This document shows positions 12,601 through 35,600 of a stretch of 64,000 bases of DNA, one piece after another. Below the pieces are notes generated by a model. The model ran no database searches. It had not been told where the DNA came from and saw only the letters and a list, made by a program, of their open reading frames with translations. Location: contig NW_027362769.1 of the NCBI RefSeq assembly GCF_046119375.1, forward strand, positions 89,776,001 to 89,840,000, written 5' to 3'. Position 1 is the first letter of the stretch, and each line of letters opens with the position of its first letter. The DNA comes from Phyllobates terribilis. Lineage: Eukaryota. A program made the translations under genes and the position numbers.

Positions 12601-15521
12601 TAATGGCGGGATGCCACAGCTGCAGAATTGCCATTTTTGGGTCACCCCACCTTCCCCCAAAAAATGCAATGAAGAGAAATTAAAACTGTGTATGTACCCC
12701 AATAAATATTATGGCTTGCTACACAAAAAAAAGCCCTCACACAGAAAAAGTTATTGGCATCAGAAAACAGCAATGAAAAATAAATATTTTATAATTTTAT
12801 TTTTTTAAATCCGCTAAAAAAAACAAAACTATACTAGATAGGTATGGATGTCATTGTACTGATCTGAAGAATCATGCTGCCAGGTCATTATTTCTGCACA
12901 TCTAATGCAGTAAAAAGAAGACCCAATAATCTGTGTATTTTTTTTTTCACCATTTCACCCCATTTGGAATTTTTTCCCCAGTTTCTTTTCAGCCACTATA
13001 TGGTTAAGTCAATGATGGAAAAAAAAAACTATTGGAAAAAGGGGAGAAAAACAAAACAAAAATTAAAATGCAAAAACAAACAAAAAAATAAAAGTACCTG
13101 TTTCTGAAGGGGTTAAAAAAATTAAATGATAGTGAAAAGTCAGCAAAACATAAATACATTGGATGCTTATCAATTAACCTTTGGCTAATGATCACAGTCG
13201 GTCTAGATAAACTTATATGTAAACCTTAAAGGTGTCCTGCACAATTATACACACAAAGGGAGCAGCCAGACGGCCGTATAAATCGGACCGAGATCAGACT
13301 GCAATGCTTGGACTGGCCGGCGGCTCTAATGACCCGAGCATGACAGCTGTATAGAAATATATGAGGTAGTCACACTTGAGTAGGGAGAGCAGCCGGCCAG
13401 TCCGTGCAATGCAGTCTGATCTCGGTCAGATTTATACGGCCGTCTGATTGCACCCATATACAGAGAACATAGACTCTGCCCCCAGTTTTATGTATGGGAC
13501 CGGGGTGATCACAAAATATAACGTCAGTCGTATACTCACAGGCCCCATCCGCCATCAGGCAGCTGCACAGATCGTAGGTAGCGCACCATCTCCTTCTTGG
13601 TAGCGTCAGGGAGGGGAGTCTGTGTCACGTGGCACACAATCAGCAGACCTAAAAAGGGTCACAGATTTAGTCCACATTCACACACACAAGTTTTTTCACG
13701 TACAAAAAGAAACGACCAAGTTTCATCAGTGATTTTTGGTCAGAATTTATCAGTTTTTCTCTATTCTTTTCCTATGTAACAGTCTGTGAAAACGGACCGC
13801 ACTTGGATGCCATCCGAGTGCAGCCAATTTCTTTCACGGACCCATAGACTTGCCTTGCTGTTCCTGATCAGACACTTGGATCACAATTGGACCACTCTGT
13901 CTGCGGAAAACATGGACATGTGAATGATCCCATTCACTATTATAGATACGAGTGCTATCCGCGTGAAAAACACAGGTAGCGCTCGTATGCGAAACCTGAA
14001 TGAGGCCTTACAGCGAGTATAGTGTATGGCAGACAGATCTAGTCATAGGGGTCTGATGTGGCTGAAAAGTCTCACCTGGCATCAAGAACAGCGGTCCGCC
14101 ATAATCCCCAGCCCAATGCCCATCCTCCGCTTGTAAGGCAGAATAAAAAGTTAGTCCATTTTCTGCCCCATCCTGGGCCGTAAGCGCCTTGGGTAAGTCT
14201 TTAAAAAACTCATTCTGAAGAGAGCAAAAGCCGTGTTATTGATGATCAGCAACATATACAGATCCTAGAACAGATCACAGGCAGCACAAATGTGCGGACA
14301 CAACGTGCACAAGGGGCCAGCAATCATTTATAGAGGATTCTTCATTCGATTCAGCTTCACTTTAGCTGAAGAAGTTGTATGAAATGATCAACTTCCAAGT
14401 CCCTTTAACTCATTTTTAAGCCAACCATAGACAGGTTATGTGCATTACATGAAGGCCGGCACAGTCTGTTTTACATCACACTAAGTACTAAACAATTTAG
14501 GGTAACTTCCCAAGTGGCACCTCTACTTCAGACTTCTCGCAGAAGAGATGCTGAAGTAATAATCCCAGTGGCATTTACTGATGGGGATATCACTGAGAAG
14601 GAGCAGGGCAGCCGCACATTTCATCCTTTACATTGCAAATGGTGACATTTCCACCTACATTCAGCAGATCTCAACCCCACAGATTTGCACTGTTTGCCTT
14701 CTACAGTCTCTGTGACCCAGTATGTATTACTGACTGCAGAATGAGCTAACTGAGAATCTGTCAGTCAGCTATGATGATCTAAAATGGATTTTGTAACTCT
14801 TTCATTTCTCTTATTTTTTTTTACCTCCTTTCAGATGATTTATGACCATAGATCACATCAAAGTTGAATGTTTCACTGCACAAAGAGCCTGTAAAAGCCA
14901 AACGGTGCAACATTTTATAATGTATTATAGATCTGCTATTAATGAAAAGTAGATTATTTAAAGGGATTTTAATACTGGATCATTTTTTTTCCTAAAATCC
15001 TTAACCTAATACTACAGGCTGCAATTTAGTAATTCTTAGGTACCGTGTCCAGCCCCAGAGAGTGCGCCTCCAGGGCAGTTTGTGGGCGATCTTCTCCCTC
15101 CACATAGCGCCAGGTTTGCCTGCCCTCTGTGCACGAGAGGCGCCAGCGAGTGAGGTCTGTTGCAGGGTCGGTCTTGTACGGACCCCCCCTTCTGCGGAGA
15201 CACCTGGAACAAAACATTGCAAAATGCCTTTTTAGGTTTATTTTATTATTACCATTACAATGACTACAGTACATAACATATAATATTGGACAACTGCATA
15301 AATAGCAATTCCCCTTTTATAAGCAGGAGTAGAATACAACAAAACTACTCAGCACCTAAAACTGATTGTACACAAGGCTATATAATACATGATTGTTAGA
15401 TCAGGCAGCACATTTGCAAAGTTTACTTTTCTGCAGCCTGTGCTCCTCCATATTTCTATGCAGCATTGATTCCAGTGACAATCACCATGCAGCAGCCTAA
15501 TACTCACGTTCCTTCGCTCAT
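3786..15521 (-). CDS. LSS: Lanosterol synthase (oxidosqualene cyclase), coding exons 1-16 (1558 nt, about 519 codons); remaining exons lie left of the window
   Basis: Sixteen exons joined with GT-AG sites in continuous frame. N-terminus [24 protein letters not shown] motifs ([16 protein letters not shown]), WCHCR and the catalytic DCTAE motif are present. Confidence 0.97.
3967..4116 (-). CDS. LSS: LSS exon 15 ([24 protein letters not shown]...DAVDV), carries catalytic DCTAE
   Basis: attcag/gtaaga junctions, 150 nt. Confidence 0.97.
4324..4374 (-). CDS. LSS: LSS exon 14 ([17 protein letters not shown])
   Basis: ttgcag/gttggt junctions, 51 nt. Confidence 0.95.
4948..5019 (-). CDS. LSS: LSS exon 13 ([24 protein letters not shown])
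   Basis: ctacag/gtgaag junctions, 72 nt. Confidence 0.93.
5065..5304. other. Assembly gap (240 N) in LSS intron 12
   Basis: Run of N. Confidence 0.99.
5409..5465 (-). CDS. LSS: LSS exon 12 ([19 protein letters not shown])
   Basis: tcttag/gtaaag junctions, 57 nt. Confidence 0.96.
6650..8274 (+). mobile_element. Tc1 DNA transposon, full length (about 1625 bp), in LSS intron 11
   Basis: TIRs CAGTACAGA(A/C)CAAAAGTTTGGACACACC at both ends; right flank TA; next to a (TA)n run. Confidence 0.93.
7064..8110 (+). pseudogene. Tc1 DD34E transposase pseudogene
   Basis: ATG 7064; premature TGA 7139-7141 and TAG 7853-7855; [25 protein letters not shown]; frameshift near the C-terminus. Confidence 0.9.
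8387..8414 (-). CDS. LSS: LSS exon 11 (LGLDGMKMQ)
   Basis: ttgcag/gtacat junctions, 28 nt, phase fits both neighbours. Confidence 0.93.
8676..9307. mobile_element. TTAA-flanked palindromic MITE (T2/Kolobok-like)
   Basis: ttaaagagaatcggtcagtaggatcaaccc ... gggttgatcctactgacagattcccttcaa; no coding capacity. Confidence 0.75.
9579..9676 (-). CDS. LSS: LSS exon 10 ([16 protein letters not shown]...IPDYLW)
   Basis: tcacag/gtaagt junctions, 98 nt. Confidence 0.96.
9763..9881 (-). CDS. LSS: LSS exon 9 (LLNIYESYH...[12 protein letters not shown])
   Basis: tcgcag/gtaagt junctions, 119 nt. Confidence 0.96.
10033..10141 (-). CDS. LSS: LSS exon 8 ([17 protein letters not shown]...LLDFAY)
   Basis: gtgcag/gtaaga junctions, 109 nt. 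Confidence 0.96.
10211..10346 (-). CDS. LSS: LSS exon 7 ([28 protein letters not shown]...SLRQ)
   Basis: ttctag/gtaagc junctions, 136 nt. Confidence 0.96.
10449..10920. mobile_element. TTAA-flanked palindromic MITE
   Basis: ttaaaggggttatccactact ... tagtggacaacccttttcaa with internal inverted arms. Confidence 0.75.
11171..11267 (-). CDS. LSS: LSS exon 6 ([33 protein letters not shown])
   Basis: ttgcag/gtgagt junctions, 97 nt. Confidence 0.96.
11390..11511 (-). CDS. LSS: LSS exon 5 ([22 protein letters not shown]...HSK)
   Basis: tcgcag/gtaggt junctions, 122 nt. Confidence 0.96.
11557..12177 (+). mobile_element. 5'-truncated L1-clade LINE (ORF2 C-terminus, 3'UTR, A-rich tail), antisense in LSS intron 4
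   Basis: [14 protein letters not shown]...[14 protein letters not shown] resembles non-mammalian L1 ORF2 ends; AATAAA and A-rich tail at 12150-12177; 15-bp TSD aacatagaattaata (11542-11556) vs aacatataatcaata (12178-12192). Confidence 0.75.
13540..13648 (-). CDS. LSS: LSS exon 4 (GLLIVCHV...[11 protein letters not shown])
   Basis: ttttag/gtgagt junctions, 109 nt. Confidence 0.96.
14076..14214 (-). CDS. LSS: LSS exon 3 (NEFFKDLPK...[20 protein letters not shown])
   Basis: cttcag/gtgaga junctions, 139 nt, QW motif. Confidence 0.96.
15044..15203 (-). CDS. LSS: LSS exon 2 ([22 protein letters not shown]...LGLDT)
   Basis: ttccag acceptor, gtacct donor, 160 nt. Confidence 0.95.
15508..15521 (-). 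CDS. LSS: LSS coding exon 1 (ATG AGC GAA GGA AC; MSEGT)
   Basis: 14-nt exon followed by a GTGAGT donor; phase fits exon 2 and matches the mammalian MTEGT start. Confidence 0.9.
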
Positions 15522-15689
15522 TTCTCTGTTCTTAACCTGGTTACTTTCTACCGATCCATCCTTTAAAACCAAGGAGGATAATGAATTAAGACGCAAAGAA
15601 TTCTAGGACTTGTAGTTCTTGAAGCGCCTCAAGCCAAAACCCGTAATAGTAAAAGACTCCATTTCCCAGGCGACATCGAGCCGCCAGAT

Positions 15690-15800
15690 CATACGTCACA
15701 CTATCCTGATATGAGCAGAGGCAGCATGAGCCAATCGCGGCGCAGAGAGCTGTATACACGTAGGCGGGGCCATTACCTGTCAGCCAATGGGTGGTGAGAA
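15690..15800 (-). promoter_or_regulatory. Putative LSS proximal promoter: two CCAAT boxes, GC box, SRE-like element
   Basis: AGCCAAT with CCAAT at 15731-15735 and 15784-15788; GGCGGGGC at 15763-15770; CTCACCACC on minus at 15790-15798; CpG-rich and 170-280 nt upstream of the ATG. The NF-Y+Sp1+SRE combination is typical of SREBP target genes. Confidence 0.55.
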
Positions 15801-16139
15801 ATACAGAATAGCGTGTTTCTTCCAGTGATGTCGCTGTATTTCTGCAGCTGGTCTCGGAGTGAGAGGTCAGAGCTGTCGGGAGACGGAGAAGCTGCAGTTC
15901 GTGTAGTAAAGGCAGCTGCGGCATTATAAATAAAAGTATGACCTTATATTAGTGTATGGTATACAGTATGAGTAAAGGCAACCTGTCAGCCCCTTTCTAT
16001 AACACCCTCCCCCTCAATAGGTGACATGGTAACCCTCAAAGTGTTCTTCTTAAAAAAAACCATTAACCTCCTTCCATAGGTCCCAGCAGTCGGACCCCCA
16101 AAATGGGTGTTATGGGCGCACCTGGAGAGGTGGATCCGC

Positions 16140-17120
16140 TTAGGCTGTGTGCCCACTATGCGTTTTTTAAGCATTTCCGCAGCAGCAATTCCGCTGCAGA
16201 AACACTTAAAAAACGCTTGGTAGAAGGTCTGCCATGTTCCCCAATGATAATCCGCATGTGCTCTGCACAAGCTGCGGAAATTTCCGCTGCGGATTATCAT
16301 TGCGGAAAAATCCGCAGCACTACCAATTATTTTGCGGAAGCGCAGCGGTTTCGCTGCCATTGACTTGCACTGGACCGCATGACATCCGCATCACTGTATA
16401 TGTACATGCGGAATCCATGCGTTTCAATGTGCGGATGGTACCCGGGTGTGGAGAAGAGGAGACTCTCCTCCGGACCCGGGTACCATAGTACCTGTAAAAA
16501 AAAAAAGAATTTAAAATAAAAAATATACATTATACTTACCTTCTGATGGCCCCCGATGCCCCGGTGTCTTTAGTGATGCGTCTTGGCTTGCCGGCAGCTC
16601 ACGATGGTCTAAAAAGGACCTGCCATGACGTCATTTAGTCGCGTGACCCGTCACATGACTAAATGACGTCATGGCAGGTCCTTTTAGTTCACCACAAGCT
16701 GCCGGCAAGCCAGGACGCATCGCTAAGGGCACCGGGGGCTATCAGAAGGTAAGTATAATGTATATTTTTTAGTTTAAATTCTTTTAACAGGTACTATGGT
16801 ACCCGGGTCTGGAGGAGAATCTCCTCTTCTCCAAACCCGGGTACCATTCTTTTCCGGTCACACTATATAAATCCATGCCGGTTGCATGGATTTATATAGT
16901 GTGACCAAGTTGACAAGCACTTTCCAAGTGATGCTAAAATCGCTTGGAAAGCGCTTGACAACCCGCATGCGGAAATGCATGTGAAGAACGCTTCACATCC
17001 GCTTATCCCTGGCAGGAAAAACGCATGTACAATCCGCATGAGTTTTTTTTTCTGCCAGGGAGATGCAGAAACGCTCAGGAAAAATCCGGAGCATTTCTGC
17101 ATCATGGGCTCATAGCCTAA
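16140..17120. mobile_element. Palindromic MITE of about 1 kb just upstream of the LSS promoter
   Basis: ttaggctgtgtgccca ... tgggctcatagcctaa; near-perfect inner palindrome about 16430-16850. Confidence 0.8.
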
Positions 17121-17254
17121 GACGTAGGTCAGGGTGAGCAGCACGCACATGAGGCAGTGGAACTGGCCTCGCCAGATGGCATCTTACCAGCAAGGACCAG
17201 CAGAGTTTGGATATGCAAGACAGCAAGTGAATCCGCACAGCTGGAAGTGCTAGA

Positions 17255-17420
17255 TCCAGCAGAGTCCAGTGTGCAGGCAGCACCGTGAATCAGCAGAGAC
17301 GAGTAGGCTGTTGTGAACCTTGGTGCAGCAGAGTCTAGTGTGCAGGCAGCACTGTGAATTAGCAGAGACGAGTAGGCTGTTGGGAACCTTGATGCAGCAG
17401 AGTTGAGTGTGCGGATACTG
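17255..17420 (+). repeat. Short tandem repeat, about 3 copies of about 68 bp (gcagcagagtc.agtgtgcaggcagcac.gtgaat.agcagagacgagtaggctgttg)
   Basis: Directly visible. Confidence 0.7.
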
Positions 17421-18469
17421 TAAATCATCAGAGGTGAGTAGGCAAGTAGGTACCTTGCTACTGAATATATGAGTGTACAGACAGCTCATTGGATTAGCAG
17501 AGACAAATTGGTAGTCAGTCACCTGGTTGCAGCACACAGGAACAGCAGAGCTGCATTGGGATTAAATCACCTTGCCGCAGATTGCTTACCATGCTCTGCT
17601 GTTCCTGAATGCTATTAGGCACCTGGTTGTTGCTAAACAAAATAGGAAATGTGGATAGACTCCTGGACAAGAAGTGGTAGCAACGTGCACCTGCTAGCTG
17701 AAAACTCAGGCGGTGCACAGCTGCCTGACTCTGCCTTAAAAGATCTTATCAGAGGTGAGTGCCAAGTTACTATAGGAACTTGACGTTCACTGGCACAGAT
17801 GGAGCCAGCTGTAGTGGAAGGAGGGAGTAAAGCACAGAGCTGGAGTCAGGACACATGAGTAACAAAATGACTCTAGCCCCCTCGAGTGAAGCAGAGGTGC
17901 GAATTATCGTCCTCCACTCCACTCGTTGCCCATGGGACTGAGAAGTAGCCGAGCGCTTTCTCCAGCAATCCCATAGACAAACTGAGCTGAGCGCCTTCAC
18001 TCCATTCAGGACCCCCCAGCGACTAAGTCATCCTCTATCCAATTTATCATTTTAGGAATAACCTTTTAAGGATGCAGCCTAATTTAGCTTTCAAGACGCA
18101 ATGATTATTTTTTTTTCATGCCCAACTTCCAAGAGCCACAACTTTCAATAATTTTTTTTGGGTGGAGAAAACAAGTGAAACAATCAGCACTAGGATGCAA
18201 CATGAGTCTGTTTTTTTCACAGATCCATTGACTTAGATTGGCGATTCCAATTCCAAAATCGGACATTTCTTCATTTTTATTTGCAAACCGCAAGAAAGTG
18301 CATGTGAAAATCTATGAAAAACATAAAACAGATACGACAAAAATAAATGTCTGAATAAGACATAAAGCACAAAAATCAGTTGATCTCTATATGTAACAAA
18401 TTATTTCTACAGCTGTAGCAGAACAAAGGTTTGTGCCGGAGAATCAGAAAGCTCTGACTTAGCTTTCAG

Positions 18470-19260
18470 CGGTCCTGGCCAAATGTTTTGAGACCGACAC
18501 AAAATTTGGTTCTCAGATTTTGCTACTTCAGTGTTTTTAGACCTTTAAGCGAGATGTTTTTATGGTTCCTGAAATAAAATTATAAGAATGTCATAAGTTT
18601 TTAATATTTTATTGACAAGTACATCAAGTTTACGCAAAGACTCAATATTTACAGTATTGTCTCTTATTTTTCAAGACTCCTGTAATTTGCCCAGGCGTCT
18701 TGGATATCAGCTTCTTGGCCAAATCCTGACAGATGACGACACATTCTTGTCTAATCAGTGCATGGAGTTTATCACAATATCTGTGTTTTTGTTTGTCCTG
18801 CTTTTTCAGGATTGACCACAAATTACCAATGGCATCGAATCTCCGCACTTTCCTGGCCATTGGCTCAATATGCCAATGTTTTGTTCACCGAGCCTCTTAG
18901 TTATCACATTTCCCTTGTGAAATGCTGGAAAAACCATTGTTCATCACCCAATTGCTCCTTGATCGTTGGGAGAAGTTGCTTTTGGAGGAGGTCTACCATT
19001 CATTATTCGTAGCAGTGTTCTTAGGTGAAATTGTGAGTGAGCTCACTCCCCATGGATGAAAAGCAGATCCACACATGAATGGTCTCAGGATGCTTTACTG
19101 CTGGCATGATACAGGACTCATGGTATCGCTCACCTCTTCTTCTTGATGTCCCAGTCTGAAGGGGGCTTCATCAGAGAAAATAACTTTACCCCTGTCTTCT
19201 TCAGTCCAATCCCTGTACTTTCTGTAAAGTTATTTTCTCTGATGAAGCCCCTTCAGAATG
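18470..19260 (-). mobile_element. Decayed 3' fragment of a Tc1 transposon
   Basis: TIR-like cggtcctggccaaatgttttgaga; minus-strand remnants KYRDWTEEDRGKVIFSDEAPF and NLWSILKK. Confidence 0.75.
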
Positions 19261-19570
19261 TTTAGGACATCTACAAGAATGATTGGGTGTGTTAAAAATA
19301 AAACTGGATCCCACACAGATCATCCATATTTGATCTCTGGATGAAAATTGAACGATTATTCATACGCTTGTGTGACCCCGACTTAAGTCTTATTGCTCCC
19401 TAGACACTATTTTGTCTTGTTTTTTACTATTCTTTCTCTCCCATTCCAATATTCATGAATTCTTGTCCACGTTCACTCAGAGCCTGTATCTCATTTTTGC
19501 CTATCATACCTCACAACACGATATCATTGTGCAAAGGAGAATTGTTTGTCATTGTAAGATAAAGCCACCA

Positions 19571-20200
19571 TAAAGGCCCCGTCACACTAAGCGATGCAGC
19601 AGCGATCCCGACAACGATACGACCTGTCAGGGATCGTTGCTGCATCGCTAATACATCGCTGGTGAGATGTCAAACAGGCAGGCTCACCAGCGATCAGGGG
19701 AGCAGCGATATTGTGGAAAGAATCGTTCCACGATGTCCTGCTCCAGTTACCAGCCTGCTGCAAGCAGGAGCAGGCTGGTAACTATGGTAAACATCGGGTT
19801 ACTAAGTGCGCGTGTGCCCCTAGTAACCCGCTGTTTACCATGGATACCACTCTGCTACGGTGCGCGGGAGCCTCCGAGCACCGTAGCAGAGTGGTATCCA
19901 TGGTAAACAGCGGGTTACTAAGTGCGCGCGTGCCCCTAGTAACCCGATGTTTACCATAGTTACCAGCCAGATCGTTGGTCCCGCTGGTCACACACAGCGA
20001 TGTGTGCTGGCCAGCGGGAGGCCAACGACCAAAAAATGGTCCAGGACACTTTGCAGCGATCAGCGACCTCACAGCAGGGGCCTGATCGTTGCAAAGTGTC
20101 ACACACAGCGACATCGCTGGTGAGGTCGCTAGTGAGTCACCAAAACCGTGACACAGCAGCGATATCGCTAGCGATATCGCTATGTGAGACGGGGGCTTAA
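19571..20200. mobile_element. Palindromic MITE with internal tandem repeats
   Basis: aaggccccgtcacact ... tgtgagacgggggcttaa. Confidence 0.8.
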
Positions 20201-20645
20201 GACTTGCAAAAAAGATAACTTACAGTCAGGACATTATCAAAATCCTCCTTGGTACTGTTATTAAAGGAACTCATCCCAAGACTAATGATTCCAATACTGC
20301 ATTCAACTAGTAATGGTGAATTAGGCAATTATCTGGGACGCAAATTCTGTAGGTATACAAGCACAGAATCATAGAGTTAGCTCATACCGTCATGTCCTAT
20401 AATTGATTTTTTTTTTTTAGCTTAGTTACACAGTGCCATTAATTCCACAGCACTTTACAGACATGATCATTGCTGTCCCCAATGGGGCTCACAATCTAGA
20501 TTTCCTATCAATATGTCTTTGGAGTGTGGGAGGAAACCGAAGAAAATCCATGCAAGCACGGGGAGAACATGCAAACAAGTAATTGTATATATTCAAGCGC
20601 AGCTTTCTTTGCCATCCCTGCACCTCATGACATGGAAGTGATATA

Positions 20646-22210
20646 CACTGCTCAAAAAAATAAAGGGAACACTTAAACAACAGAATATAACTCATAGTAA
20701 ATCAAACTGTCCACTTAGGAAGCAACACTGATTGACAATCAATTTCACATGCTGTTGTGCAAATGGAATAGACAATAGATGGAAATTATTGGCAATTATC
20801 AAGACACCCTCAATAAAGGAGTGGTTCTGCAGGTGGGGACCACAGACCACATCTCAGTACCAATGCTTTCTGGCTGATGTTTTGGTCACTTTTGAATGTT
20901 GGTTGTGCTTTCACACTCGTGGTAGCATGAGACAGACTCTACAACCCACAGAAGTTGCTCAGGTAGTGCAGCTCATCCAGGATGGCACATCAATGCGAGC
21001 TGTGGCAAGAAGGTTTGCTGTGTCTGTCAGTGTAGTGTCCAGAGGCTGGAGGCGCTACCAGGAGACAGGCCAGTACACCAGGAGACGTGGAGGGGGCCGT
21101 AGGATGGCAACCATCCAGCAGCAGGACCACTACCTCCGCCTTTGTGCAAGGAGGAACTGGAGGAGCACTGCCAGAGCCCTGCAAAATGACCTCCAGCAGG
21201 CCACAAATGTGCATGTGTCTGCACAAATGGTTAGAAACCGACTCCATGAGGGTGGTATGAGGGCCCGACGTCCACAGATGGGGGTTGTGCTCACAGCCCA
21301 ACACCGTGCAGGACGCTTGGCATTTGCCACAGAACACCAGGATTGGCAAAGTCGCCACTGGCGCCCTGTGCTCTTCACAGATGAAAGCAGGTTCACACTG
21401 AGCACATGTGACAGACGTGACAGAGTCTGGAGATGCTGTGGAGAGTGATCTGAGGTCTGCAACATCCTTCAGCATGACCGGTTTTGCAGTGGGTCAGTAA
21501 TGATGTGGGGTGGCATTTCTTTGGAGGGCCGCACAGCCCTCCATGTGCTCGCCAGAGGTAGCCTGACTGCCATTAGGTACAGAGATGAGATCCTCAGACC
21601 CCTTGTGAGACCATATGCTGGTGCGGTTGGCCCTGGGTTCCTCCTAATTTAGGGCAATGCCAGACCTCATGTGGCTGGAGTGTGTCAGCAGTTCCTGCAA
21701 GATGAAGGCATTGAAGCTATGGACTGGCCCACCCGTTCCCCAGACCTGAATCCGAATGAGCACATCTGGGACATCATGTCTCGCTCCATCCACCAACGTC
21801 ACGTTGCACCACAGACTGTCCAGGAGTTGGTGGATGCTTTAGTCCAGGTCTGGGAGGAGATCCCACAGGAGACCATCCGCAACCTCATTAGGAGCATGCC
21901 CAGGCGTTGTAGGGAGGTCATACAGGCACGTGGAGGCCACACACAATACTGAGCCTCATTTTGACTTGTTTTAAGGACTTTACATCAAAGTTGGATCAGC
22001 CTGTAGTGTGTTTTTCCACTTTAATTTTGGGGGTGACTCCAAATCCAGGCCTCCATTGGTTAATAAATTTGATTTCCATTGATGATTTTTGTGTGATTTT
22101 GTTGTCAGCACATTCAACTTTGTACAGAACAAAGTATTCAATGAGAATATTTCATTCATTCAGATCTAGGATGTGTTATTTGAGTGTTCCCTTTATTTTT
22201 TTGAGCAGTG
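20646..22210 (+). mobile_element. Tc1 DNA transposon, full length (1565 bp), 28-bp TIRs, inserted 2 nt after the YBEY stop codon
   Basis: TA|CACTGCTCAAAAAAATAAAGGGAACACT ... AGTGTTCCCTTTATTTTTTTGAGCAGTG|CA. Confidence 0.95.
20927..21952 (+). pseudogene. Tc1 DD34E transposase pseudogene
   Basis: [27 protein letters not shown]; TGA at 21446-21448; QDNA motif mutated to TAG-GGC-AAT. Confidence 0.9.
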
Positions 22211-22212
22211 CA

Positions 22213-22308
22213 TTATTCTTGGTCATAATGCTCTGAAGTCAGTGGCGTAAGTGCAGATCCAGAAGCTCGGTTTATCGCCATTAGAACTTCACTTTCCTTC
22301 TCAAACAT
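22213..22308 (-). CDS. YBEY: YBEY last coding exon (MFEKESEVLMAINRASGSALTPLTSEHYDQE*)
   Basis: ttaacag acceptor; resembles the mammalian MFQKEK...LQPLT C-terminus; TAA stop. Confidence 0.9.
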   Translation of the reverse strand: MFEKESEVLMAINRASGSALTPLTSEHYDQE

Positions 22309-25285
22309 CTGTTAAAGTGAACAAATGATATGAAAACAATTAGCATTTATTAATGTAGATTAATCCTAAATATCTAAAACCTTGGGTCAACTTTTATATT
22401 AGTGATCCTTTATAAAAAAAAAACCTAATATAGGGAGCACAGACACTACAGGTATCCCCAGAGGCCAGAAGACCTTTCTTCAACAGTTCCAAAATAAAAG
22501 CAGAATTATAAATGCCACATATTTGTGGAGCAGCGGCAGGTGTCTAAGGGGTAACAATGCTCCTTGTGGAGAGTGACAAGCAAAGCCTGGCATATCAGAG
22601 TGAGGAGACTTATAAGCCATGCATGCTCCTCTGGGAAATTAAACACACCCCTGGCATGGTCACACCACTGGTCTGAACTGTGCTCTCTTCCGTGTTGTTA
22701 GTAGAGGCAGGTCTGCCTCTGTAGCATGGAAGGGCAGGGGACACAGAAGCCGACCGGATGCAGCAATCCTACCAACTTCAGAGCGGTGCTTCCAAGTTGT
22801 ATAACAGAATCTTTAATCTTGTCTACGAAACCAGCCACTAAGGTGGCAATTTTGCAATTTTGACCATTAGCAAACGTGACAACCTGTTTAAAGGATCACT
22901 CTCTTTATTAATGGGTAAAATTGTAAAAACAAGCAACATTGCACTTCGCTTTCATAAGAGCGGAGAGGATTTTTCATTTTTTGTTTACTGCTTGTTGTCT
23001 GGTTTACTGACCACGGCTACATGTGTCACGGCTGTTCGATAGCTGGGACACATGCAGGGATTGCCTAACAAACAGGCAATCCCTGCATGTGTCACAACTG
23101 TCTAACAGCCGTGACACATGCAGCCACGGTAACTCAAACATAGATGCTGAGCACACCGAAAATACTCGGCGAGCACCCGAGCGTGCTCGATTAAAGGGTT
23201 AAACGAGCACGCTCGCTCAACACTACTTACAACCTCTAACAGCTCCTGATCCAACCAACTTCAGAGTAACTGCGCTCCTCAAATGCTGTGGAGGCAGAGC
23301 TGCTTCTGCTTGTAGCATCGGAGCACACAGTTTGGGCCAGAGGCAGGACTATGTCACTAGTCTGTACTGTCAATCAAGCAGTAGTGCACTGCCCCCATCA
23401 AGCTGGAAGCCAGGAAAGCAGTGAGCTCCAGAAGAATGAACATGACACAACCCCCTTTGTCTGGAAGCACTGGAGATCTGTAAAAGGGCTCAAACCAGTG
23501 GTTTTCCTTTAAAAGTAACCGTCACTATATTCATGCTGCTTGAACAAAGAGCAGCATGAATCAGATGCTGGCTGCACAATTGCAATCAGGTTATCTTTTA
23601 CTGTGAACTGCTGCGGTATTTTAGGGAAAACATTGTTTTAAAGCTGTCCGGTGACTATAGGGAGAAACCTAGCTCGTCAGGTGCAGTTCCTGGCCGGCTT
23701 CTCCCCGTGCAGCTCTTGTTGATTAACAGGTCTCTCCCAATGTACATACATAGAACAGACCTGTCAATCAACTGGAGCGCTGCAAAGGGAAGCCGGCCGG
23801 GGACTGCACCAGATGAGTCATTTCTCTTTCTACAATCACTAGAAGGCCTTTCAAACTATGTTCTCTCTGAAACATCCGAGTGTCTGAAAGTAAGGGTCGA
23901 ATTCATGCTTCTTGTGGCAGATTCCCTATAAAAAAAATAATACTGCAAATGTAAGCCATGACTATATACTCATGTAAAGCGAAAAGCTGTGTAATATCAG
24001 CACAATCTTAATTTAAAAAAAAAACAAAACTAACCTTTCTCCAGTCGTCTGGACTATGATGAGTATAACCAAGCAGGTGACATAAGCCGTGTACTGCCGT
24101 CACCTGGGGGAAAAGTAATTTATATTTTAGTCTTCCGGCAGTAGAAATACTTTATAAATATTCACTGGACGGAACAAGACCATAAAATGTAACCTCTATA
24201 TGTGACCAACCAGGTATAGGACAGATTCACTTATTACACGTACTTGTGGAGCAGATACTAGCGATTGTAGATCGCTACTCTGAGTGAGGACACAACTCAA
24301 CACATTCTTGAAGAATAATTAGAACAAGTAAGAAATCCTCATTTTTTTTTTACTTTTTAACAAATTTTCTACAAGCTCTTATCCAACTCAGCTCAGATCC
24401 TTTTTCTATGTCGTACTTCACAACAACCAACCTTTGAGCTCCAGAGAATTGTTGTTGATAGCACGTTAACACCATAAGATTTGCATTCTCTATAACTAAC
24501 TTACAGTCAAGACATTGTTAAAATCCTCCTTCTTTTCTTCACACTGGTGATACATAAACTCTACTCCAAGGTAAATGTCTCCTAAATTGTATTCATCCGG
24601 GAATGGTGGATCAGGCAATAATCCGGGACACAAATTCTGGAAGTATATAAGGAGTTCATGCTCTCAGATGCAGCGAACACATATTATATTGGAATTACTT
24701 AAAGAGGAGCCATCACCAGGTTAAAAGTGGCTTGTATTTAGTTTTTTTTTAATCCGCCATATGGTTCCAGATATATGGGCCTTTTTAGCTAATGGTCATT
24801 TTGATGGTGTGGCTCACAAGGTCAGGATCCTCGGGGGCATGTCTTTAGAATGCTCTGCATTATTACCCTGTGAGCCACACCCTCTTGTAAAGACTACAAA
24901 AATTAGTACTGAATAAAAAGGTCCACATCTCTGAAACTGTATGGCGGATTTTAAAAAAAAAAGCAAAAAACAGAGTACTTAGATGTGCAGCGGAAATAAA
25001 GTCAGAGCAAAAAGTGGTCCCTTTTTACCCGGTGACAGGCTCCTTTCAAGACAACCATCATTGCCATTTGTGTACCTCATGAAATGGAAATGACAACACG
25101 TCTGTAGCTTTGTCTTTTCGTCTGTAACGTTTGTTCAGTTGTCGAATCTTTGTATCATTTATACATATTACCCCAACATCAAACCTCTTCACACCCAGAC
25201 AGCTTCTGGCAATTTCTAGATTCTTGCGTAAATGGGCTCTGCGAAGAGGGATCACATGCTGCAGGTTCCGTATGAGAAGAGACAT
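22213..25285 (-). CDS. YBEY: Endoribonuclease YbeY, complete CDS in 4 coding exons (168 aa)
   Basis: MSLLIRNLQHVIPLRRA...TDVLSFPFHE, LGDIYLG and the metal-binding HGLCHLLGYTH motif; phases are continuous; ends in TAA at 22213-22215. Confidence 0.96.
23509..23931. mobile_element. TTAA-type MITE in the last YBEY intron
   Basis: Internal inverted arms gtgcagttcctggccggcttc / gaagccggccggggactgcac. Confidence 0.65.
24035..24103 (-). CDS. YBEY: YBEY coding exon 3 (VTAVHGLCHLLGYTHHSPDDWRK)
   Basis: ccccag/gttagt junctions, 69 nt, H-x3-H-x5-H motif. Confidence 0.96.
24505..24636 (-). CDS. YBEY: YBEY coding exon 2 (NLCPGLLPDPPFPDEYNLGDIYLGVEF...NVLT)
   Basis: ttccag/gtaagt junctions, 132 nt. Confidence 0.95.
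24699..25049. mobile_element. TTAA-type MITE filling most of a YBEY intron; related copy at about 6240-6600
   Basis: ttaaagaggagccatcacc ... ggtgacaggctcctttcaa; aatccgccata...ctgtatggcgga shared with 6308-6515. Confidence 0.7.
25076..25285 (-). CDS. YBEY: YBEY coding exon 1 (MSLLIRN...SFPFHE)
   Basis: Acceptor caacag then GGTG then ATG; donor gtacac; 210 coding nt. Confidence 0.95.
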
Positions 25286-27510
25286 CACCCTGTTGGGACA
25301 AATAATACAGAGACTTGGCGTGAAGGCCGGGGGTCGTCCGATTTGGACGATGTCTACATGTTAGAAGGGAACTTTGGCTTACAAATACTGACCAAATACT
25401 GGCATGCCCTAAGAGTAATTCCCAGAATCACTCCCAGAAGTTATCCCCTGTCAGATAAACCACTGATCACTGGCAGTCTGACCAGAAGGCCATAGAATGT
25501 TATGGTTGGAAGGGACCTCCAGGGTCATCGTGTTCAACCCCCTGCTCAATGCAGGATTCACTAAACCATATCAGACAGATGTCTGTCCAGCCTCTGTTTG
25601 AGGACTTCCATTGAAGGAGAACTCACCTCTCGTGGCCGCCTGTTCCACTCATTGATCACCCTCACTGTCAAAAACTTTTTTCTAATATCTAATCTGTATC
25701 TTCTCCCATTCAGTTTCATTCCATTGCTTCTCGTGTTTCCATGTGCAAATGACAATAAGGATGATCCTTCTACACTGTGACATCCCTTCAGATATTTATA
25801 GACCGCTATTAAGTCTCCTCTTAGCCTTCTTTTTTGCAAGCTAAACATTCCCAGATCCTTTAACCGTTCCTCATAGGACATAGTTTGCAGTCTGCTCACT
25901 ATCCTGGTAGCTCTTCTCTGAACTTGCTTTAGTTTTTCGATGTATTTTCGACACAGTATTCCAGATGAGGTCTGACCAAGGAGGAGTAGAGGGGAATAAT
26001 TACTTCATGTGATCTAGACTTTATGCTTCTCTTAATATATCCCAGAACTGTGTTTGCCTTTTTTGCTGCTGCATCACACTGTTGACTCATGTGCAGTCTG
26101 TGATCTATTAGTATACCCAAGTCTTTTTCACACGTGCTGTTGCTTAGTTCTATTCCTCCTGTTCTGTAGATGTAATTTTCATTTTTCTTGCCTAGATGTA
26201 GAGTCTTGCATTTCTCTCTGTTAAATACCATTCTATTAAGTCACTTCCCATTGTTCAAGCTTATCTAGATCCTTCTGAATCTTTTTTCTGTCTTCTCTAG
26301 TGTTAGTTATACCTCCTAGCTTAGCATTGTCTGTAAATTTGATTAGTTTATCTTCAGTTCCCTTAGCTAGATCATTTATAAAAATGTTGAACAACACTGG
26401 GGTCAGGACAGAGCCTTGTGGTACCCACTTGAAACGCTCTTCCAATTGTATGTGCAACCATTTATTACCACTCTGAGTTTGATCACTGAGCCAGTTATGA
26501 ATCCACCTAACCGTAGCCTTGTCAATCCCATACTTGGTCATTTTTCAATAAGGATAGTATGAGATACTTTACCAAATGCTTTGCTGAACTCAAGATATAC
26601 TATATCTACCGCATTTCCCTGATACACCCAGTCAGTGATTCCATCATAGAAGGAAATCTGATTAGTCTTGCATGACTTGTTTGCTACAAACCCATGCTGG
26701 CTCTGGTAATTACCATATTCTTATCCAAGTACTAACATACATGCTGTTTAATAATTTGTTCAAAGATCTTTCCTGGTATAGAAGTAAGGCGCACAGGCCT
26801 TTAATTTCCTGGCTCCATATTCTTTTCTTTTTTGAATATAAGGGACAACATTTGCCCTTCTCCAATCTTCTGGGACTTCTCCTGTTCACCAGGATTTTTC
26901 AAATATTCTGGTTAATGGTTCTGCAATTTCCTCTGTTATCTCTTTCAGTACCCTAGGATGTAATTAATCTGGACCAGGATATTTAAATTCATGTAAATTA
27001 GCTAAATGTTCCCTCACCATCTCTTTGTTTATAGATAGTGTGGATTATTTTGTTGTCACAAAGTATTCCTATAATAATAGGGTGCAAAGACTGAACCGCA
27101 AGGAGATTTATTGGATTTATAAATTGAACACACTTAAACCACATGGACTGACTGAAATTAAGGAAGTATTCTTATAATAATGTTGTCACAATTTATTAGT
27201 CGATCGTATTTGAGGTTGATCATTCCTACCATCTTTTCTCACTAAAGGATCGTTTACCTCACCTTGTTATTTTAAGACCAACAGCTGTTCAAAGTATTAT
27301 CGGTAATGATTTAATTTTCACTCTCCCTCCATCTATATTATCATTATATGAATATATTATTATTTATTTTCCCCTTAATGTATTGTTATAATTTATCTCT
27401 ACATTTTCCCACCTTATATTGTTATAATCGTTGATCCTCTGGGTAGATTCCTTGGTTTTGCTTCACCCAGCCTAACTTCTGGTCTCATAGCCTGCAGGGT
27501 GTAGCATAGT

Positions 27511-32631: not shown

Positions 32632-35600
32632 GTGAGGGCATTTTTCTCCAAAATTTATTTTCTGTTCTATAATGTCCATAAAGCAATATTTTCTTAAAAA
32701 AAAAAAAGCTGATAANNNNNNNNNNNNNNNNNNNNNNNNNNNNNNNNNNNNNNNNNNNNNNNNNNNNNNNNNNNNNNNNNNNNNNNNNNNNNNNNNNNNN
32801 NNNNNNNNNNNNNNNNNNNNNNNNNNNNNNNNNNNNNNNNNNNNNNNNNNNNNNNNNNNNNNNNNNNNNNNNNNNNNNNNNNNNNNNNNNNNNNNNNNNN
32901 NNNTGTCCATAGGCCTTGCAGTGGTGATGTCATGACTACAGCGACTATGATGGCTATAGCCAATCACTGGTTTTGGCAGCTTTATACGTTTTCATCAGCA
33001 TCACCTCTGAGCCCTGTGATTGGCAGCAGCGGTCACATATGGTGTAGTCGTGATGTCACGGCTGTAGACTGGGCAGAGGAGAATGGCTGGACCTGCAGAG
33101 GGTTACTAACTTTGATCATATTATTTTTCCCAAGCGCAAGCCTATACACATAAAACATTTTTAGAACCGAAAACCCATCGAAATCTTTTTCTTGTTTTCT
33201 AATGTGTCGCTTTTCTTCTCCAGCTACTTCCTCAAGCTCTTCAGTAAGTAAAGGAGAACGTTGTGATGGGGCTGAACACTCGCTCCCGGTCTTCCCCAGT
33301 GAGCTGACTACTATTTTTCTAAAGAATGTGCCTAATAAATTGAACAAGAAAAACATCATGGAGGATTACTTTAAGAAGTATGGCAAAATTCTGCGTATTA
33401 ACTGCAGGATAAAGCAAAAAACGGTCCACATTCAATATAGTAACCATGTGAGTAAAAAAAAAAAAAAAAAAATTAAATAATGTGCTTATACTTTTGATTG
33501 CTGGGTCATTGGTAAAAAGGGTAATGTGGTTTTGTATTGGGATTTTAGTGAAGCTGGTGACGTCACATCTGCATATATCTACCAGCTTGCGTGTGTGATC
33601 GACGGGTATTGCACGCCTTTTTTATTCATTGGTATTGCGGGTGCGCAATACCTGATACTCGTGCAGAATTGTAATTTGATTGTCACCTATGAGTACATTT
33701 ACTAACCAAACTCTGATGGTTTAGTCATTTTAGGCAGGTACAATATATGTATTTGTACATCTGTATAAATAAGGGCATGTTCACACAGTGTTTTTTTTTT
33801 CCCAAGCGGGTTTTGAGCAGATCCTTTCCGGAAAATGCCTGAAAAAGTGCTCCAAAGAATCTTCCTATTCATTTCTATGTAAAATCGACAAGCTTTTCAC
33901 ACGTTCCGGGTTTTGAGCGTCTTTTAACCGCTTCAGATTTCTAAAAACACCAAGTGGTTAAATTAAGTGAGCTGACCATTTTTTCAGGTGTTTTCTACTA
34001 GATCCACACAGGAAGGCTTAAAAACGGTTATAAGATTCATGGGCATTTGTTTTTACTGTTTTTCACTTCAAAAATTCTGAGTGTCTTATTCATTGCTTAA
34101 CAGATTTTTATTTAAAAAAAAAAAAAAAAAAAAATGGCTAAACCCCCCCAAAAAACATATACAGAAAATGGCAACAATAAACAGTAACAAGTTGCTTCAA
34201 AAAAACAAAACCGTAACGAAAACTCTTCAGGATAAGAAAATGCATTTTTTTCTCTTGAAGTGGTTTCCGCTAGAAAATCCCATAATTTTCACACTCGTGA
34301 AACAAATGTATGAACATGCTCCTACGGTATTGATTTGGGGAAAAAAAGGAATCACTCTTAGGATACTATTTTTGCTTTTACAGAACTCTGCGGCAGCAGC
34401 AAGGAAAGCAGTGAAAAAACTACATAAAGACATTGTTGCTTTTTGGCAAAGGAAAAAAACAAGTGAGTGATTATGTCTCATTTATGTGCTACAAGTACAG
34501 AATCCCATTATTAAGACGTTCTCTTAGAGAAGCAATGCTTGCATTGGAGACTCTCTCAAATAAAATGGCATCCAATTGAGCAGACACGATTGTATGACAT
34601 TGGAGGCATACGTATGGGTGCCATTGTAGCTCCAGTGCTGTCAGAGCCATGATACACCTGTGTGTATGGACTCTTAATCCCAGTAATACTTATCATCTTT
34701 CAGGTCCTGCGAAGAAGAAAGAGGCTCAAATAGCGGAGAGAGAAGTCCGACAAAATGAGCAGAAAGGCATTTCAGCCATCGCGCCTGTATGCAAACCTCT
34801 TCTCCGAGGGCTAAAGGGGTAATTGTAAAACACTCATGGTAGTTTAGAATTGTTATTTTCTTTTTAATACTAAAATAGTTTTTTTGCTCTGTTTTAGATC
34901 TTCTCTTAAAAAGACCACATTTCCCAAGAATCTTCAGTTTAGTGTTCAAAATATTGATAGCTCAGCACCGTCTTTTGACACCTCAATGTCTTTGCCTCCT
35001 TCACTGTTGCATCTTGTGGGAACCGTAGCGGAGACCTCAGAGGAGAAGTATCGGCTCCTAGACCAGAGGGACAAGATATTGAGACAAGGTATTCAAAGAA
35101 TATGTTGAAGTTTTGCAATAATTTAGATATATAGAGAAGTAAATTTGTCATTTGTGGAAAACTAACCAAAAAAAGAAATGGATAAGTCTCTTAATACATT
35201 TTCCAATTAGTTTTCCTCCTATGTTTATAGCTCGAGTTAAACGAACTGGATTAGATCAAGCCAAAGTTTTTGTAGGAAACTGTCCTGACATGTGCCCTGA
35301 AAAGGAGCGATACATGAGGGATACTCGCAATCAACTTAGCCTCTATGAGTTCCTTCCAGGAACAGACAAGGTAATTGAATCCATCACCTTCCTACCTCCA
35401 AATATTTTGAGCATGGCATGTATATCCCCCAAAAATCTTTGTCTTTTGTAGCATTTTTTGTGTTCAGTTTACTTTGAATTGTCTACATTTTGGTTTGAAA
35501 ATAACGTTCACGATCCCTTCCTTTCAAAGTTGGACCATGCAGCTGCAATAAAAGAGTACAGCCGGTCTTCAGCAGATCAGGATGAGCCCCTGCCACACGA

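What the first reader, a model, noticed from the sequence alone, without database searches (positions are those of the whole stretch)
20646..22215. Tc1 inserted 2 nt after the YBEY stop codon; its TIR supplies an AATAAA 15 nt downstream
Seen: the minus strand reads GAA TAA TG|CACTGCTCAAAAAAATAAAGGG, so the YBEY 3'UTR is transposon from its third base, with AATAAA at 22197-22192. The ancestral UTR is displaced 1565 bp, and by eye I found no minus-strand AATAAA in about 19260-20645. Inference: either YBEY now polyadenylates in the TIR, giving a very short TE-derived 3'UTR, or the mRNA reads antisense through the whole transposase, which could form a TIR panhandle and seed small RNAs. The right TSD reads CA instead of TA, so the insertion is not brand new.
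Basis: partly seen in the sequence, partly recalled or inferred. Interest (0 to 1): 0.72.

Follow-up and report, generated by a model that had tools for sequence, protein, structure and literature searches.

The report
Dead Tc1 transposon abutting YBEY stop codon
In the golden poison frog a decayed Tc1 "jumping gene" landed on the TA right after the stop codon of the YBEY gene, so the gene's 3' untranslated region now starts inside the transposon, which offers a ready-made poly(A) signal; the structure is real and lineage-specific, but whether the signal is used is untested and this kind of event is ordinary in this transposon-rich genome.

Summary
The window is Phyllobates terribilis (GCA_046119375.1). 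YBEY lies on the minus strand in four phase-0 exons whose translations match XP_073502869.1 exactly, with stop TAA at 22215-22213. A 1565-bp Tc1-like element (20646-22210) follows 2 nt later. Its terminal 27 nt are identical at both ends. Its transposase lies antisense to YBEY and is dead: two in-frame stops and the second DDE aspartate changed to Gly.

Ranitomeya imitator, R. variabilis (five copies) and Anomaloglossus baeobatrachus all have an empty site. Anomaloglossus reads TAA-TA-TCACTTCC, exactly the predicted target, so the insertion is Phyllobates-lineage specific and the gene-side TA later became TG.

The minus-strand AATAAA at 22197-22192 is the only one for 3.6 kb downstream of the stop. 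It is a family-wide feature of both inverted repeats, not a local adaptation. Its context is weak: no UGUA upstream, and a GU-rich block only about 56 nt downstream.

No transcript data could be reached, so poly(A) use in the repeat versus read-through stays open. A read-through RNA could form a 37-bp, -60 kcal/mol stem between the two repeats. This is a new example of a known kind, of modest interest.

The parts
20646..22210 (+). Tc1-like DNA transposon, 1565 bp, transposase sense on + (antisense to YBEY)
   Evidence: Termini. 92.8% identical over its full length to intact 1572-bp copies flanked by TA (L011, L013-L015). Pfam Tc1 domains.
20646..20682 (+). Distal terminal inverted repeat, well-matched outer 37 nt. 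Carries AATAAA on the + strand, facing inward.
22174..22210 (-). Gene-proximal terminal inverted repeat, outer 37 nt. This is the first transposon sequence in a YBEY transcript.
   Evidence: Only 1 difference from the family reference in the last 67 nt; this is not significant.
20927..21955 (+). Transposase pseudogene. One frame throughout, in-frame stops at codons 174 (21446-21448) and 241 (21650-21652), second catalytic Asp changed to Gly, and a 9-nt insertion at 21150-21158.
20644..20645 (.). Intact TA target-site duplication copy (distal side)
   Evidence: Intact family copies are flanked by TA.
22211..22212 (.). Mutated target-site duplication copy: CA on +, TG in gene sense
   Evidence: The Anomaloglossus empty site TAA-TA-TCACTTCC shows the ancestral TA.
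22192..22197 (-). AATAAA hexamer inside the repeat, starting 16 nt after the last base of the stop codon. Candidate YBEY poly(A) signal.
22020..22025 (-). ATTAAA hexamer inside the element, 188 nt after the stop. Second candidate signal.
22213..22308 (-). YBEY last coding exon: 31 codons plus TAA stop at 22215-22213, acceptor ttaacag
   Evidence: The C-terminus is conserved in Ranitomeya and Anomaloglossus.
24035..24103 (-). YBEY exon 3 (23 codons) with the zinc motif HGLCHLLGYTH
24505..24636 (-). YBEY exon 2 (44 codons)
25076..25285 (-). YBEY first coding exon of isoform X2 (70 codons)
20198..20643 (-). Displaced ancestral 3' flank, orthologous to the sequence directly after the stop codon in R. 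imitator (80% identity). Includes a SINE-like repeat at about 20433-20585 and an AATATA at 20593-20588.
18600..18613 (-). Next canonical hexamers downstream of the element (AATAAA 18613-18608, ATTAAA 18605-18600), 3.6 kb after the stop

Best explanation
Shown: a Tc1-like cut-and-paste transposon integrated at the TA dinucleotide immediately 3' of the YBEY stop codon. It belongs to a family shared by salmonids, other teleosts and frogs. The integration happened in the Phyllobates lineage after its split from Ranitomeya. The copy has since decayed: it has two stop codons, has lost a catalytic Asp, carries indels, and one duplication copy changed from TA to TG. The YBEY coding sequence and the MCM3AP-YBEY-LSS gene order are intact.

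Inferred: the YBEY 3' end is now most likely formed inside the element. The likeliest site is the AAUAAA in the inverted repeat, 16 nt after the stop, which would give a 3'UTR of roughly 35-45 nt. The internal AUUAAA at +188 is the alternative. This hexamer is the first canonical signal the polymerase meets, and the next one lies 3.6 kb away.
For: Structure.

Species and gene identity: L002 is 100% identical to the window, and the exons match P0043.

Empty sites: the window's two flanks are contiguous in R. imitator at L001 18511/18513. Five R. variabilis copies and Anomaloglossus lack the element, and Anomaloglossus shows the exact predicted target TAA-TA-TCACTTCC.

Family: intact 1572-bp copies flanked by TA-TA have the same termini and are 92.8% identical to this copy. 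The transposase is about 90% identical to fish and frog Tc1-like transposases.

Poly(A) inference: the repeat hexamer is the only minus-strand AATAAA in the 3.6 kb after the stop. Tc1-free orthologues have no canonical hexamer for 1.7-2.3 kb in Ranitomeya, so the insertion introduced a canonical signal where none was near. A very short YBEY 3'UTR is not implausible: a transcript-type Logan contig of another vertebrate has AATAAA 29 nt after the YBEY stop, followed by a U-rich run.
Against: No transcript evidence was reachable.

The context of the repeat hexamer is weak. There is no UGUA in the 100 nt upstream, and positions +10 to +60 are A-rich (U 0.32, G+U 0.42). The only GU-rich decamer lies about 56 nt downstream.

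The hexamer is conserved in every family copy because it sits in the transposase-binding terminus, so its presence says nothing about host use.

The low divergence of the gene-proximal repeat is not significant: 1 difference in the last 67 nt, where about 3.7 would be expected in the last 65-nt bin, Poisson P about 0.12.
Confidence: 0.5

Rival explanations
1. Read-through. The signals inside the repeat and element are largely ignored. YBEY transcripts run antisense through the whole dead transposase and end in the displaced ancestral flank, at the non-canonical AAUAUA (20593-20588) or at AAUAAA/AUUAAA near 18613-18600. Such RNAs carry both repeats, can fold into a long stem, and could be edited or diced. 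This may coexist with partial use of the repeat site.
For: The repeat hexamer has weak auxiliary elements. The AATATA at 20593 has the best downstream U/GU content of all candidates (U 0.44, G+U 0.64). Ranitomeya orthologues seem to manage without a nearby canonical hexamer, which suggests that ancestral 3'-end formation used non-canonical or distant sites that still exist here. The predicted RNA duplex between the two repeats is -60.1 kcal/mol, against -19.6 +/- 3.6 for shuffles, with a 28-bp perfect run.
Against: A canonical AAUAAA placed first in the transcript is usually used at least in part. The AATATA is not conserved in Ranitomeya or Anomaloglossus. There are no transcript or small-RNA data.
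Confidence: 0.35
2. The insertion is an assembly artefact, or a polymorphic allele present in the sequenced individual only, and so has no species-level consequence.
For: Only one assembly of this species could be examined. Highly repeated Tc1 copies are prone to misassembly in dendrobatid genomes (PMC12208295).
Against: The copy is unique and decayed: it differs from the family reference at 113 alignment columns, including private indels. Both junctions are clean, with a duplication remnant at exactly the orthologous target TA. One duplication copy has mutated. All this points to an old, real insertion.
Confidence: 0.04
3. This YBEY copy is an unexpressed duplicate or pseudogene, so its 3' end is irrelevant.
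For: Ranitomeya variabilis and Anomaloglossus carry many YBEY-like duplicates.
Against: This copy sits in the conserved MCM3AP-YBEY-LSS arrangement. It has four intact phase-0 exons with good splice sites, the HxxxHxxxxxH motif and a conserved stop position. Only one P. terribilis YBEY gene appeared among the listed database proteins, 15 of the 31 cluster members.
Confidence: 0.03

Closest known systems
Tc1-like elements shared by salmonids, other teleosts and frogs (DTSsa / Tc1-N_SSa type; de Boer et al. 2007, PMC2198921; Rogers et al. 2018, PMC6278860)
   Same: About 1.57 kb long with a TA target duplication and terminal inverted repeats. Single transposase with paired-like HTH plus DDE_3 domains. 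About 90% amino-acid identity to Salmo, Oncorhynchus, Cirrhinus and Pygocentrus transposases, and hits in Xenopus and Leptobrachium.
   Different: This copy is dead (two stops, D to G, indels). I could not assign the exact Repbase or DTSsa family number because no named consensus was available in the tools.
Transposable-element-derived poly(A) sites and 3'UTRs in vertebrate genes
   Same: A TE inserted in or next to a 3'UTR brings a canonical AAUAAA that can become the gene's proximal poly(A) signal and shorten or replace the UTR.
   Different: Most described cases involve retroelements that bring their own sense-strand signal. Here the hexamer lies in the inverted repeat of a DNA transposon and faces inward, so it would act on read-in transcripts from either side. 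Its use is not demonstrated.
Inverted-repeat (panhandle) RNAs from DNA transposons embedded in host transcripts. Sense and antisense Tc1 transcripts in salmonids: PMC1192797. Convergent transcription and RNAi at Sleeping Beauty repeats: abstract of PMC3343047, seen in the listing and not read in full.
   Same: A read-through YBEY RNA would contain both repeats and antisense transposase sequence. The predicted stem is -60 kcal/mol.
   Different: This is purely predicted. No small-RNA or editing data were available.
YbeY/YBEY endoribonuclease (Pfam PF02130)
   Same: Pfam hits, the HGLCHLLGYTH zinc motif, and exact identity to annotated P. terribilis YBEY.
   Different: No difference in the protein. 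Only the 3' flank is altered.

Membership tests
Tc1/mariner DNA transposon (Tc1-like) | Terminal inverted repeats bounding an element of about 1.3-2.4 kb | tested here: met
   The 27-nt termini are identical, the outer 37 nt are 94.6% matched and the arms are 64 nt at 78%. The element is 1565 bp.
Tc1/mariner DNA transposon (Tc1-like) | TA target-site duplication | tested here: met
   The distal copy is TA. The proximal copy is CA on the + strand, one substitution away. Intact relatives are flanked by TA-TA, and the empty site in Anomaloglossus has a single TA.
Tc1/mariner DNA transposon (Tc1-like) | Transposase with N-terminal paired-like HTH and a DD(34)E catalytic domain | tested here: met
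   HTH_Tnp_Tc3_2 at 3.3e-19 and DDE_3 at 1.2e-7. In this copy the ORF is broken by 2 stops and the second Asp is Gly, so it qualifies as a family member but not as an active one.
Tc1/mariner DNA transposon (Tc1-like) | Empty orthologous site in relatives, showing mobility | tested here: met
   R. imitator, R. variabilis (5 copies) and A. baeobatrachus.
YbeY/YBEY endoribonuclease gene | PF02130 domain with the H-x3-H-x5-H zinc-binding motif | tested here: met
YbeY/YBEY endoribonuclease gene | Orthology: conserved neighbours and identity to the annotated protein | tested here: met
   MCM3AP lies upstream and LSS downstream in both P. terribilis and R. imitator. The exon translations equal P0043.
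TE-derived functional poly(A) site | Canonical hexamer in the sense orientation of the host transcript | tested here: met
   AATAAA at 22197-22192 on the minus strand.
TE-derived functional poly(A) site | U/GU-rich downstream element within about 40 nt of the cleavage site, and UGUA or U-rich upstream elements | tested here: inconclusive
   No UGUA upstream. The downstream region is A-rich, and the only GU-rich decamer starts about 56 nt after the hexamer.
TE-derived functional poly(A) site | mRNA 3' ends mapping 10-30 nt downstream of the hexamer | not testable with these tools
   No transcript fragments were found. Gene ranges in the collection stop at the stop codon.

The most novel reading that the evidence does not exclude
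The inward-facing AAUAAA carried at positions 14-19 of both inverted repeats of this Tc1 family works as an element-borne terminator of read-in transcription. At this locus it has become the main YBEY poly(A) signal. That would replace, in one step, an ancestral 3' end that lacked any nearby canonical signal with a TE-derived 3'UTR of about 40 nt. With Tc1 elements making up about 7% of a 12.6-Gb genome, the same motif would then be a genome-wide source of premature and alternative polyadenylation in poison frogs and salmonids.
Probability: 0.2. Interest if true: 0.5.

Novelty: new member of a known kind. Interest (0 to 1): 0.27.

Why it matters
YBEY is a conserved single-domain endoribonuclease, implicated in mitochondrial ribosome biogenesis in vertebrates (general knowledge, not tested here). 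The insertion leaves its protein untouched but replaces its whole 3'UTR from the third base on. If the poly(A) signal in the repeat is used, this is a clean, datable natural experiment in instant 3'UTR replacement by a DNA transposon, with Tc1-free orthologues as controls. It would also suggest that this very abundant Tc1 family scatters ready-made poly(A) signals through poison-frog genes. If the signal is not used, the locus is simply one of very many Tc1 insertions in a genome that is about 7% Tc1.

Tried and rejected
1. Transcript evidence.
- I searched the protein word index with the C-terminal 69 residues of the database protein P0043 to catch partial products from transcript or read assemblies. 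It found nothing.
- An exact look-up of a 31-aa ORF spanning the Tc1/YBEY junction found nothing.
- All 31 members of the dendrobatid YBEY cluster come from annotated NCBI genomes. None come from Logan.
- The gene ranges returned by the look-up of encoding contigs end at the stop codon. They are CDS ranges and give no UTR information.

2. Other copies of the element. There are none in the window or in about 290 kb of Ranitomeya and Anomaloglossus loci. I therefore could not build a frog-specific family reference. I used intact copies from ENA and Logan contigs of unknown host instead.

3. Selection on the gene-proximal repeat. It shows 1 difference where about 3.7 are expected, which is not significant. 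I rejected this as evidence of host use.

4. A conserved ancestral poly(A) hexamer. None is shared between P. terribilis, Ranitomeya and Anomaloglossus in the first few hundred nt after the stop.

5. Rfam over 15000-27000 gave no hit.

6. An inward AATAAA is not a general Tc1 property. The other Tc1 derivative in the window (61351-62827) has different termini without AATAAA.

7. Spliced model. Exons were searched singly by reference, and the database protein P0043 was used where a full-length sequence was needed.

8. N runs at 5065-5304 and 32716-32903 were left as they are.

9. The window is frog sequence, not human.

Full report
**What is in the sequence**

The + strand from 20646 to 22210 is a 1565-bp element. 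Its 27-nt termini (CACTGCTCAAAAAAATAAAGGGAACAC) are identical in inverted orientation and occur nowhere else in the window, with 0 expected in shuffles. The outer 37 nt match at 94.6%, and the repeat finder reports 64-nt arms at 78%.

Between the repeats, one + strand frame (20927-21955) encodes a Tc1-type transposase: HTH_Tnp_Tc3_2 at 3.3e-19 and DDE_3 at 1.2e-7. The frame is interrupted by in-frame stops at codons 174 and 241. The motif that should hold the second catalytic Asp reads *GNARPH. The copy is therefore non-autonomous and decayed.

**The gene next to it**

On the minus strand, four stop-free stretches with proper splice sites translate to consecutive pieces of one protein: 25285-25076, 24636-24505, 24103-24035 and 22308-22213, all phase 0.
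- Exons 1 and 3 hit Pfam YbeY (PF02130), and exon 3 carries HGLCHLLGYTH.
- A word search with the open stretch around exon 1 returned frog YBEY proteins.
- The cluster listing included Phyllobates terribilis YBEY isoform X2 (XP_073502869.1, P0043). Its 168 residues equal the four exon translations piece by piece.
- The genomic locus of that gene (L002, GCA_046119375.1, scaffold JBJBSG010000009.1) is 100% identical to the window over 26 kb. The window is therefore P. terribilis.
- MCM3AP lies upstream in divergent orientation. LSS lies downstream on the same strand, as in R. imitator.

The database protein served that purpose.

**The junction**

In gene sense the sequence reads ...GAC CAA GAA TAA TG|CACTGCTCAAAAAAATAAAGGG.
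- The stop is 22215-22213.
- Two bases follow (22212-22211), then the element starts at 22210.
- AATAAA occupies 22197-22192, with 15 nt between it and the stop.
- On the far side the element is followed by TA (20645-20644) and then TCACTTCC.

**Is it a real, lineage-specific insertion?**

Yes.
- In R. imitator the sequence aligned to window 22538-22212 ends at L001 18511, and the sequence aligned to window 20643-20198 starts at L001 18513. The two flanks are contiguous there.
- Five R. variabilis YBEY copies read TAA-TCTA-TCACTTCC, as does R. imitator.
- The aromobatid Anomaloglossus baeobatrachus, an outgroup to Dendrobatidae, reads TAA-TA-TCACTTCC.
- That is exactly the predicted pre-insertion site: a single TA directly after the stop, duplicated on integration. 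The gene-side copy later mutated from TA to TG. Ranitomeya has a separate 2-nt insertion.
- The stop position and C-terminal peptide are conserved across these frogs, so the coding sequence was not touched.

**The family**

The transposase is about 90% identical to Tc1-like transposases of salmonids, cyprinids and characiforms, and also matches Xenopus and Leptobrachium entries.

Contigs carrying an intact 338-aa ORF (L011-L018, from ENA and Logan samples whose host I do not know) align to the window copy over its full length at 92.8%. Several are exactly TA plus 1572 bp plus TA. Every terminus begins TA|CACTGCTCAAAAAAATAAAGGGAACAC. The inward-facing AATAAA is therefore a family feature present at both ends, presumably held by the transposition function of the terminus.

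Published work fits this picture:
- Salmonid Tc1-like families have near-identical relatives in frogs (PMC2198921).
- There is phylogenetic evidence for fish-frog horizontal transfer of Tc1/mariner in Oophaga pumilio (PMC6278860).
- TcMar-Tc1 makes up about 7.3% of P. terribilis reads in a 12.6-Gb genome (PMC12208295).

By my arithmetic that is on the order of one Tc1-equivalent per 20 kb. A handful of insertions within a few bases of a stop codon are therefore expected genome-wide (inference).

**Age**

The copy differs from the intact reference at 113 alignment columns, about 5.6% substitutions. It also has a 16-nt deletion after 20698 and a 9-nt insertion at 21150-21158. Neutral flank identity between P. 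terribilis and R. imitator is about 73-85%.

The insertion therefore post-dates the Phyllobates/Ranitomeya split but is not recent. This agrees with the mutated duplication copy. How much of the 5.6% arose before insertion is unknown, because no frog-specific reference copy was available.

**Poly(A) signals**

| Position on minus strand | Hexamer | Location | Distance from stop |
|---|---|---|---|
| 22197-22192 | AATAAA | gene-proximal repeat | +16 |
| 22025-22020 | ATTAAA | inside the element | +188 |
| 20593-20588 | AATATA | displaced ancestral flank | about +1620 |
| 18613-18608 | AATAAA | downstream of the element | about +3600 |

- Without the element, the first canonical hexamer would be 2033 nt after the stop.
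- In R. imitator it is at 2319 (inside a lineage-specific insertion), in R. variabilis at 1740, and in Anomaloglossus an ATTAAA at 264. No hexamer is positionally conserved.
- The ancestral 3' end is therefore unknown. It probably used a non-canonical or distant signal.
- The insertion put a canonical AAUAAA first in line.
- Its context is poor: there is no UGUA in the 100 nt upstream, which is coding sequence. The next 50 nt are A-rich, and a GU-rich decamer starts only about 56 nt downstream.
- A short YBEY 3'UTR is not implausible in itself. A transcript-type contig from another vertebrate has AATAAA 29 nt after the YBEY stop, followed by a U-rich run.

**Read-through alternative**

A transcript that crosses the element would be antisense to the transposase and would carry both repeats. 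These are predicted to pair at -60.1 kcal/mol, against -19.6 +/- 3.6 for shuffles, with a 28-bp perfect run. That is long enough in principle for editing or dicing (inference).

**What could not be done**

No YBEY transcript fragment of any dendrobatid was reachable. The gene ranges returned are CDS-only. The functional question is therefore open.

I put about 0.5 on 3'-end formation inside the element, mainly at the repeat hexamer. I put about 0.35 on predominant read-through, and small weights on an artefact or polymorphic allele and on a silent gene copy. The first two can coexist as alternative polyadenylation.

**Comparison and verdict**

- The element meets all the defining features of a Tc1-like transposon: inverted repeats, TA duplication, HTH plus DDE transposase, and an empty site in relatives.
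- The gene meets those of YBEY.
- As a 'TE-derived poly(A) site' it has the hexamer, but the auxiliary elements are inconclusive and transcript ends are untested.
- TE-supplied poly(A) signals and TE-derived 3'UTRs are a well-known kind.
- The less usual points are the inward-facing hexamer in a DNA-transposon repeat and the position flush against the stop codon.
- I rate this as a new member of a known kind, with interest about 0.27.

The earlier scan note on a different Tc1 derivative at 61351-62827 (s1-230110) led me to compare termini. That element has different repeats and no AATAAA.

Noticed in passing
L003-L007 (Ranitomeya variabilis CM120280.1, about 184.9-187.9 Mb) and the Anomaloglossus entries: YBEY, often together with LSS, is present in many near-identical copies in R. 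variabilis (at least 5-6 loci within about 3 Mb). Anomaloglossus baeobatrachus has a dozen or so 'YbeY-like' proteins. Only one P. terribilis gene and one R. imitator gene appeared among the 15 of 31 cluster members that were listed. This looks like a segmental amplification of the YBEY-LSS block in some poison frogs.
   Followed up: partly
L001:18511-18514 and L003-L007 just after the stop codon: Ranitomeya has 2 extra bases (TC/CT) between the YBEY stop and the TA that served as the Tc1 target in Phyllobates. Anomaloglossus lacks them.
   Followed up: yes
window 20433-20585 (+ strand), with an A12 run at 20408-20419: SINE-like repeat with the widespread '...tgtgggaggaaaccg...acggggagaacatgcaaac' core, shared at the orthologous position with R. 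imitator. It is therefore older than the Tc1 insertion and is part of the displaced YBEY 3' flank.
   Followed up: partly
L011-L018 (ENA and Logan contigs): Apparently intact copies of the same Tc1 family: 1572 bp, 338-aa uninterrupted ORF, TA on both sides. L011 and L013 differ from each other by only 3 nt. They occur in several unrelated sequencing runs, which suggests a recently active element in some host or hosts I could not identify.
   Followed up: partly
L019 (Logan SRR12657022 contig, 2769 nt): A transcript-like contig carries a complete YBEY ORF (194-694), AATAAA 29 nt after its stop, and then a 355-aa O-fucosyltransferase-family ORF 250 nt further on the same strand. It could be a read-through, an overlap of neighbouring transcripts, or an assembly chimera.
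   Followed up: no
window 61351-62827: The other Tc1 derivative in the window belongs to a different family. Its termini read TA|CACTGTGTTCCAAATTATTATGCAAATAATATTTTC and have no AATAAA.
   Followed up: partly
L001:20730-23680: R. imitator has an insertion of about 3 kb in the YBEY-LSS intergenic region relative to P. terribilis. It contains that species' first AATAAA downstream of YBEY.
   Followed up: no
window 5065-5304 and 32716-32903: N runs (assembly gaps or masked). They were left untouched. The second lies 7.4 kb upstream of the first exon of the 168-aa isoform (25285), within the stretch assigned to MCM3AP in L002.
   Followed up: no
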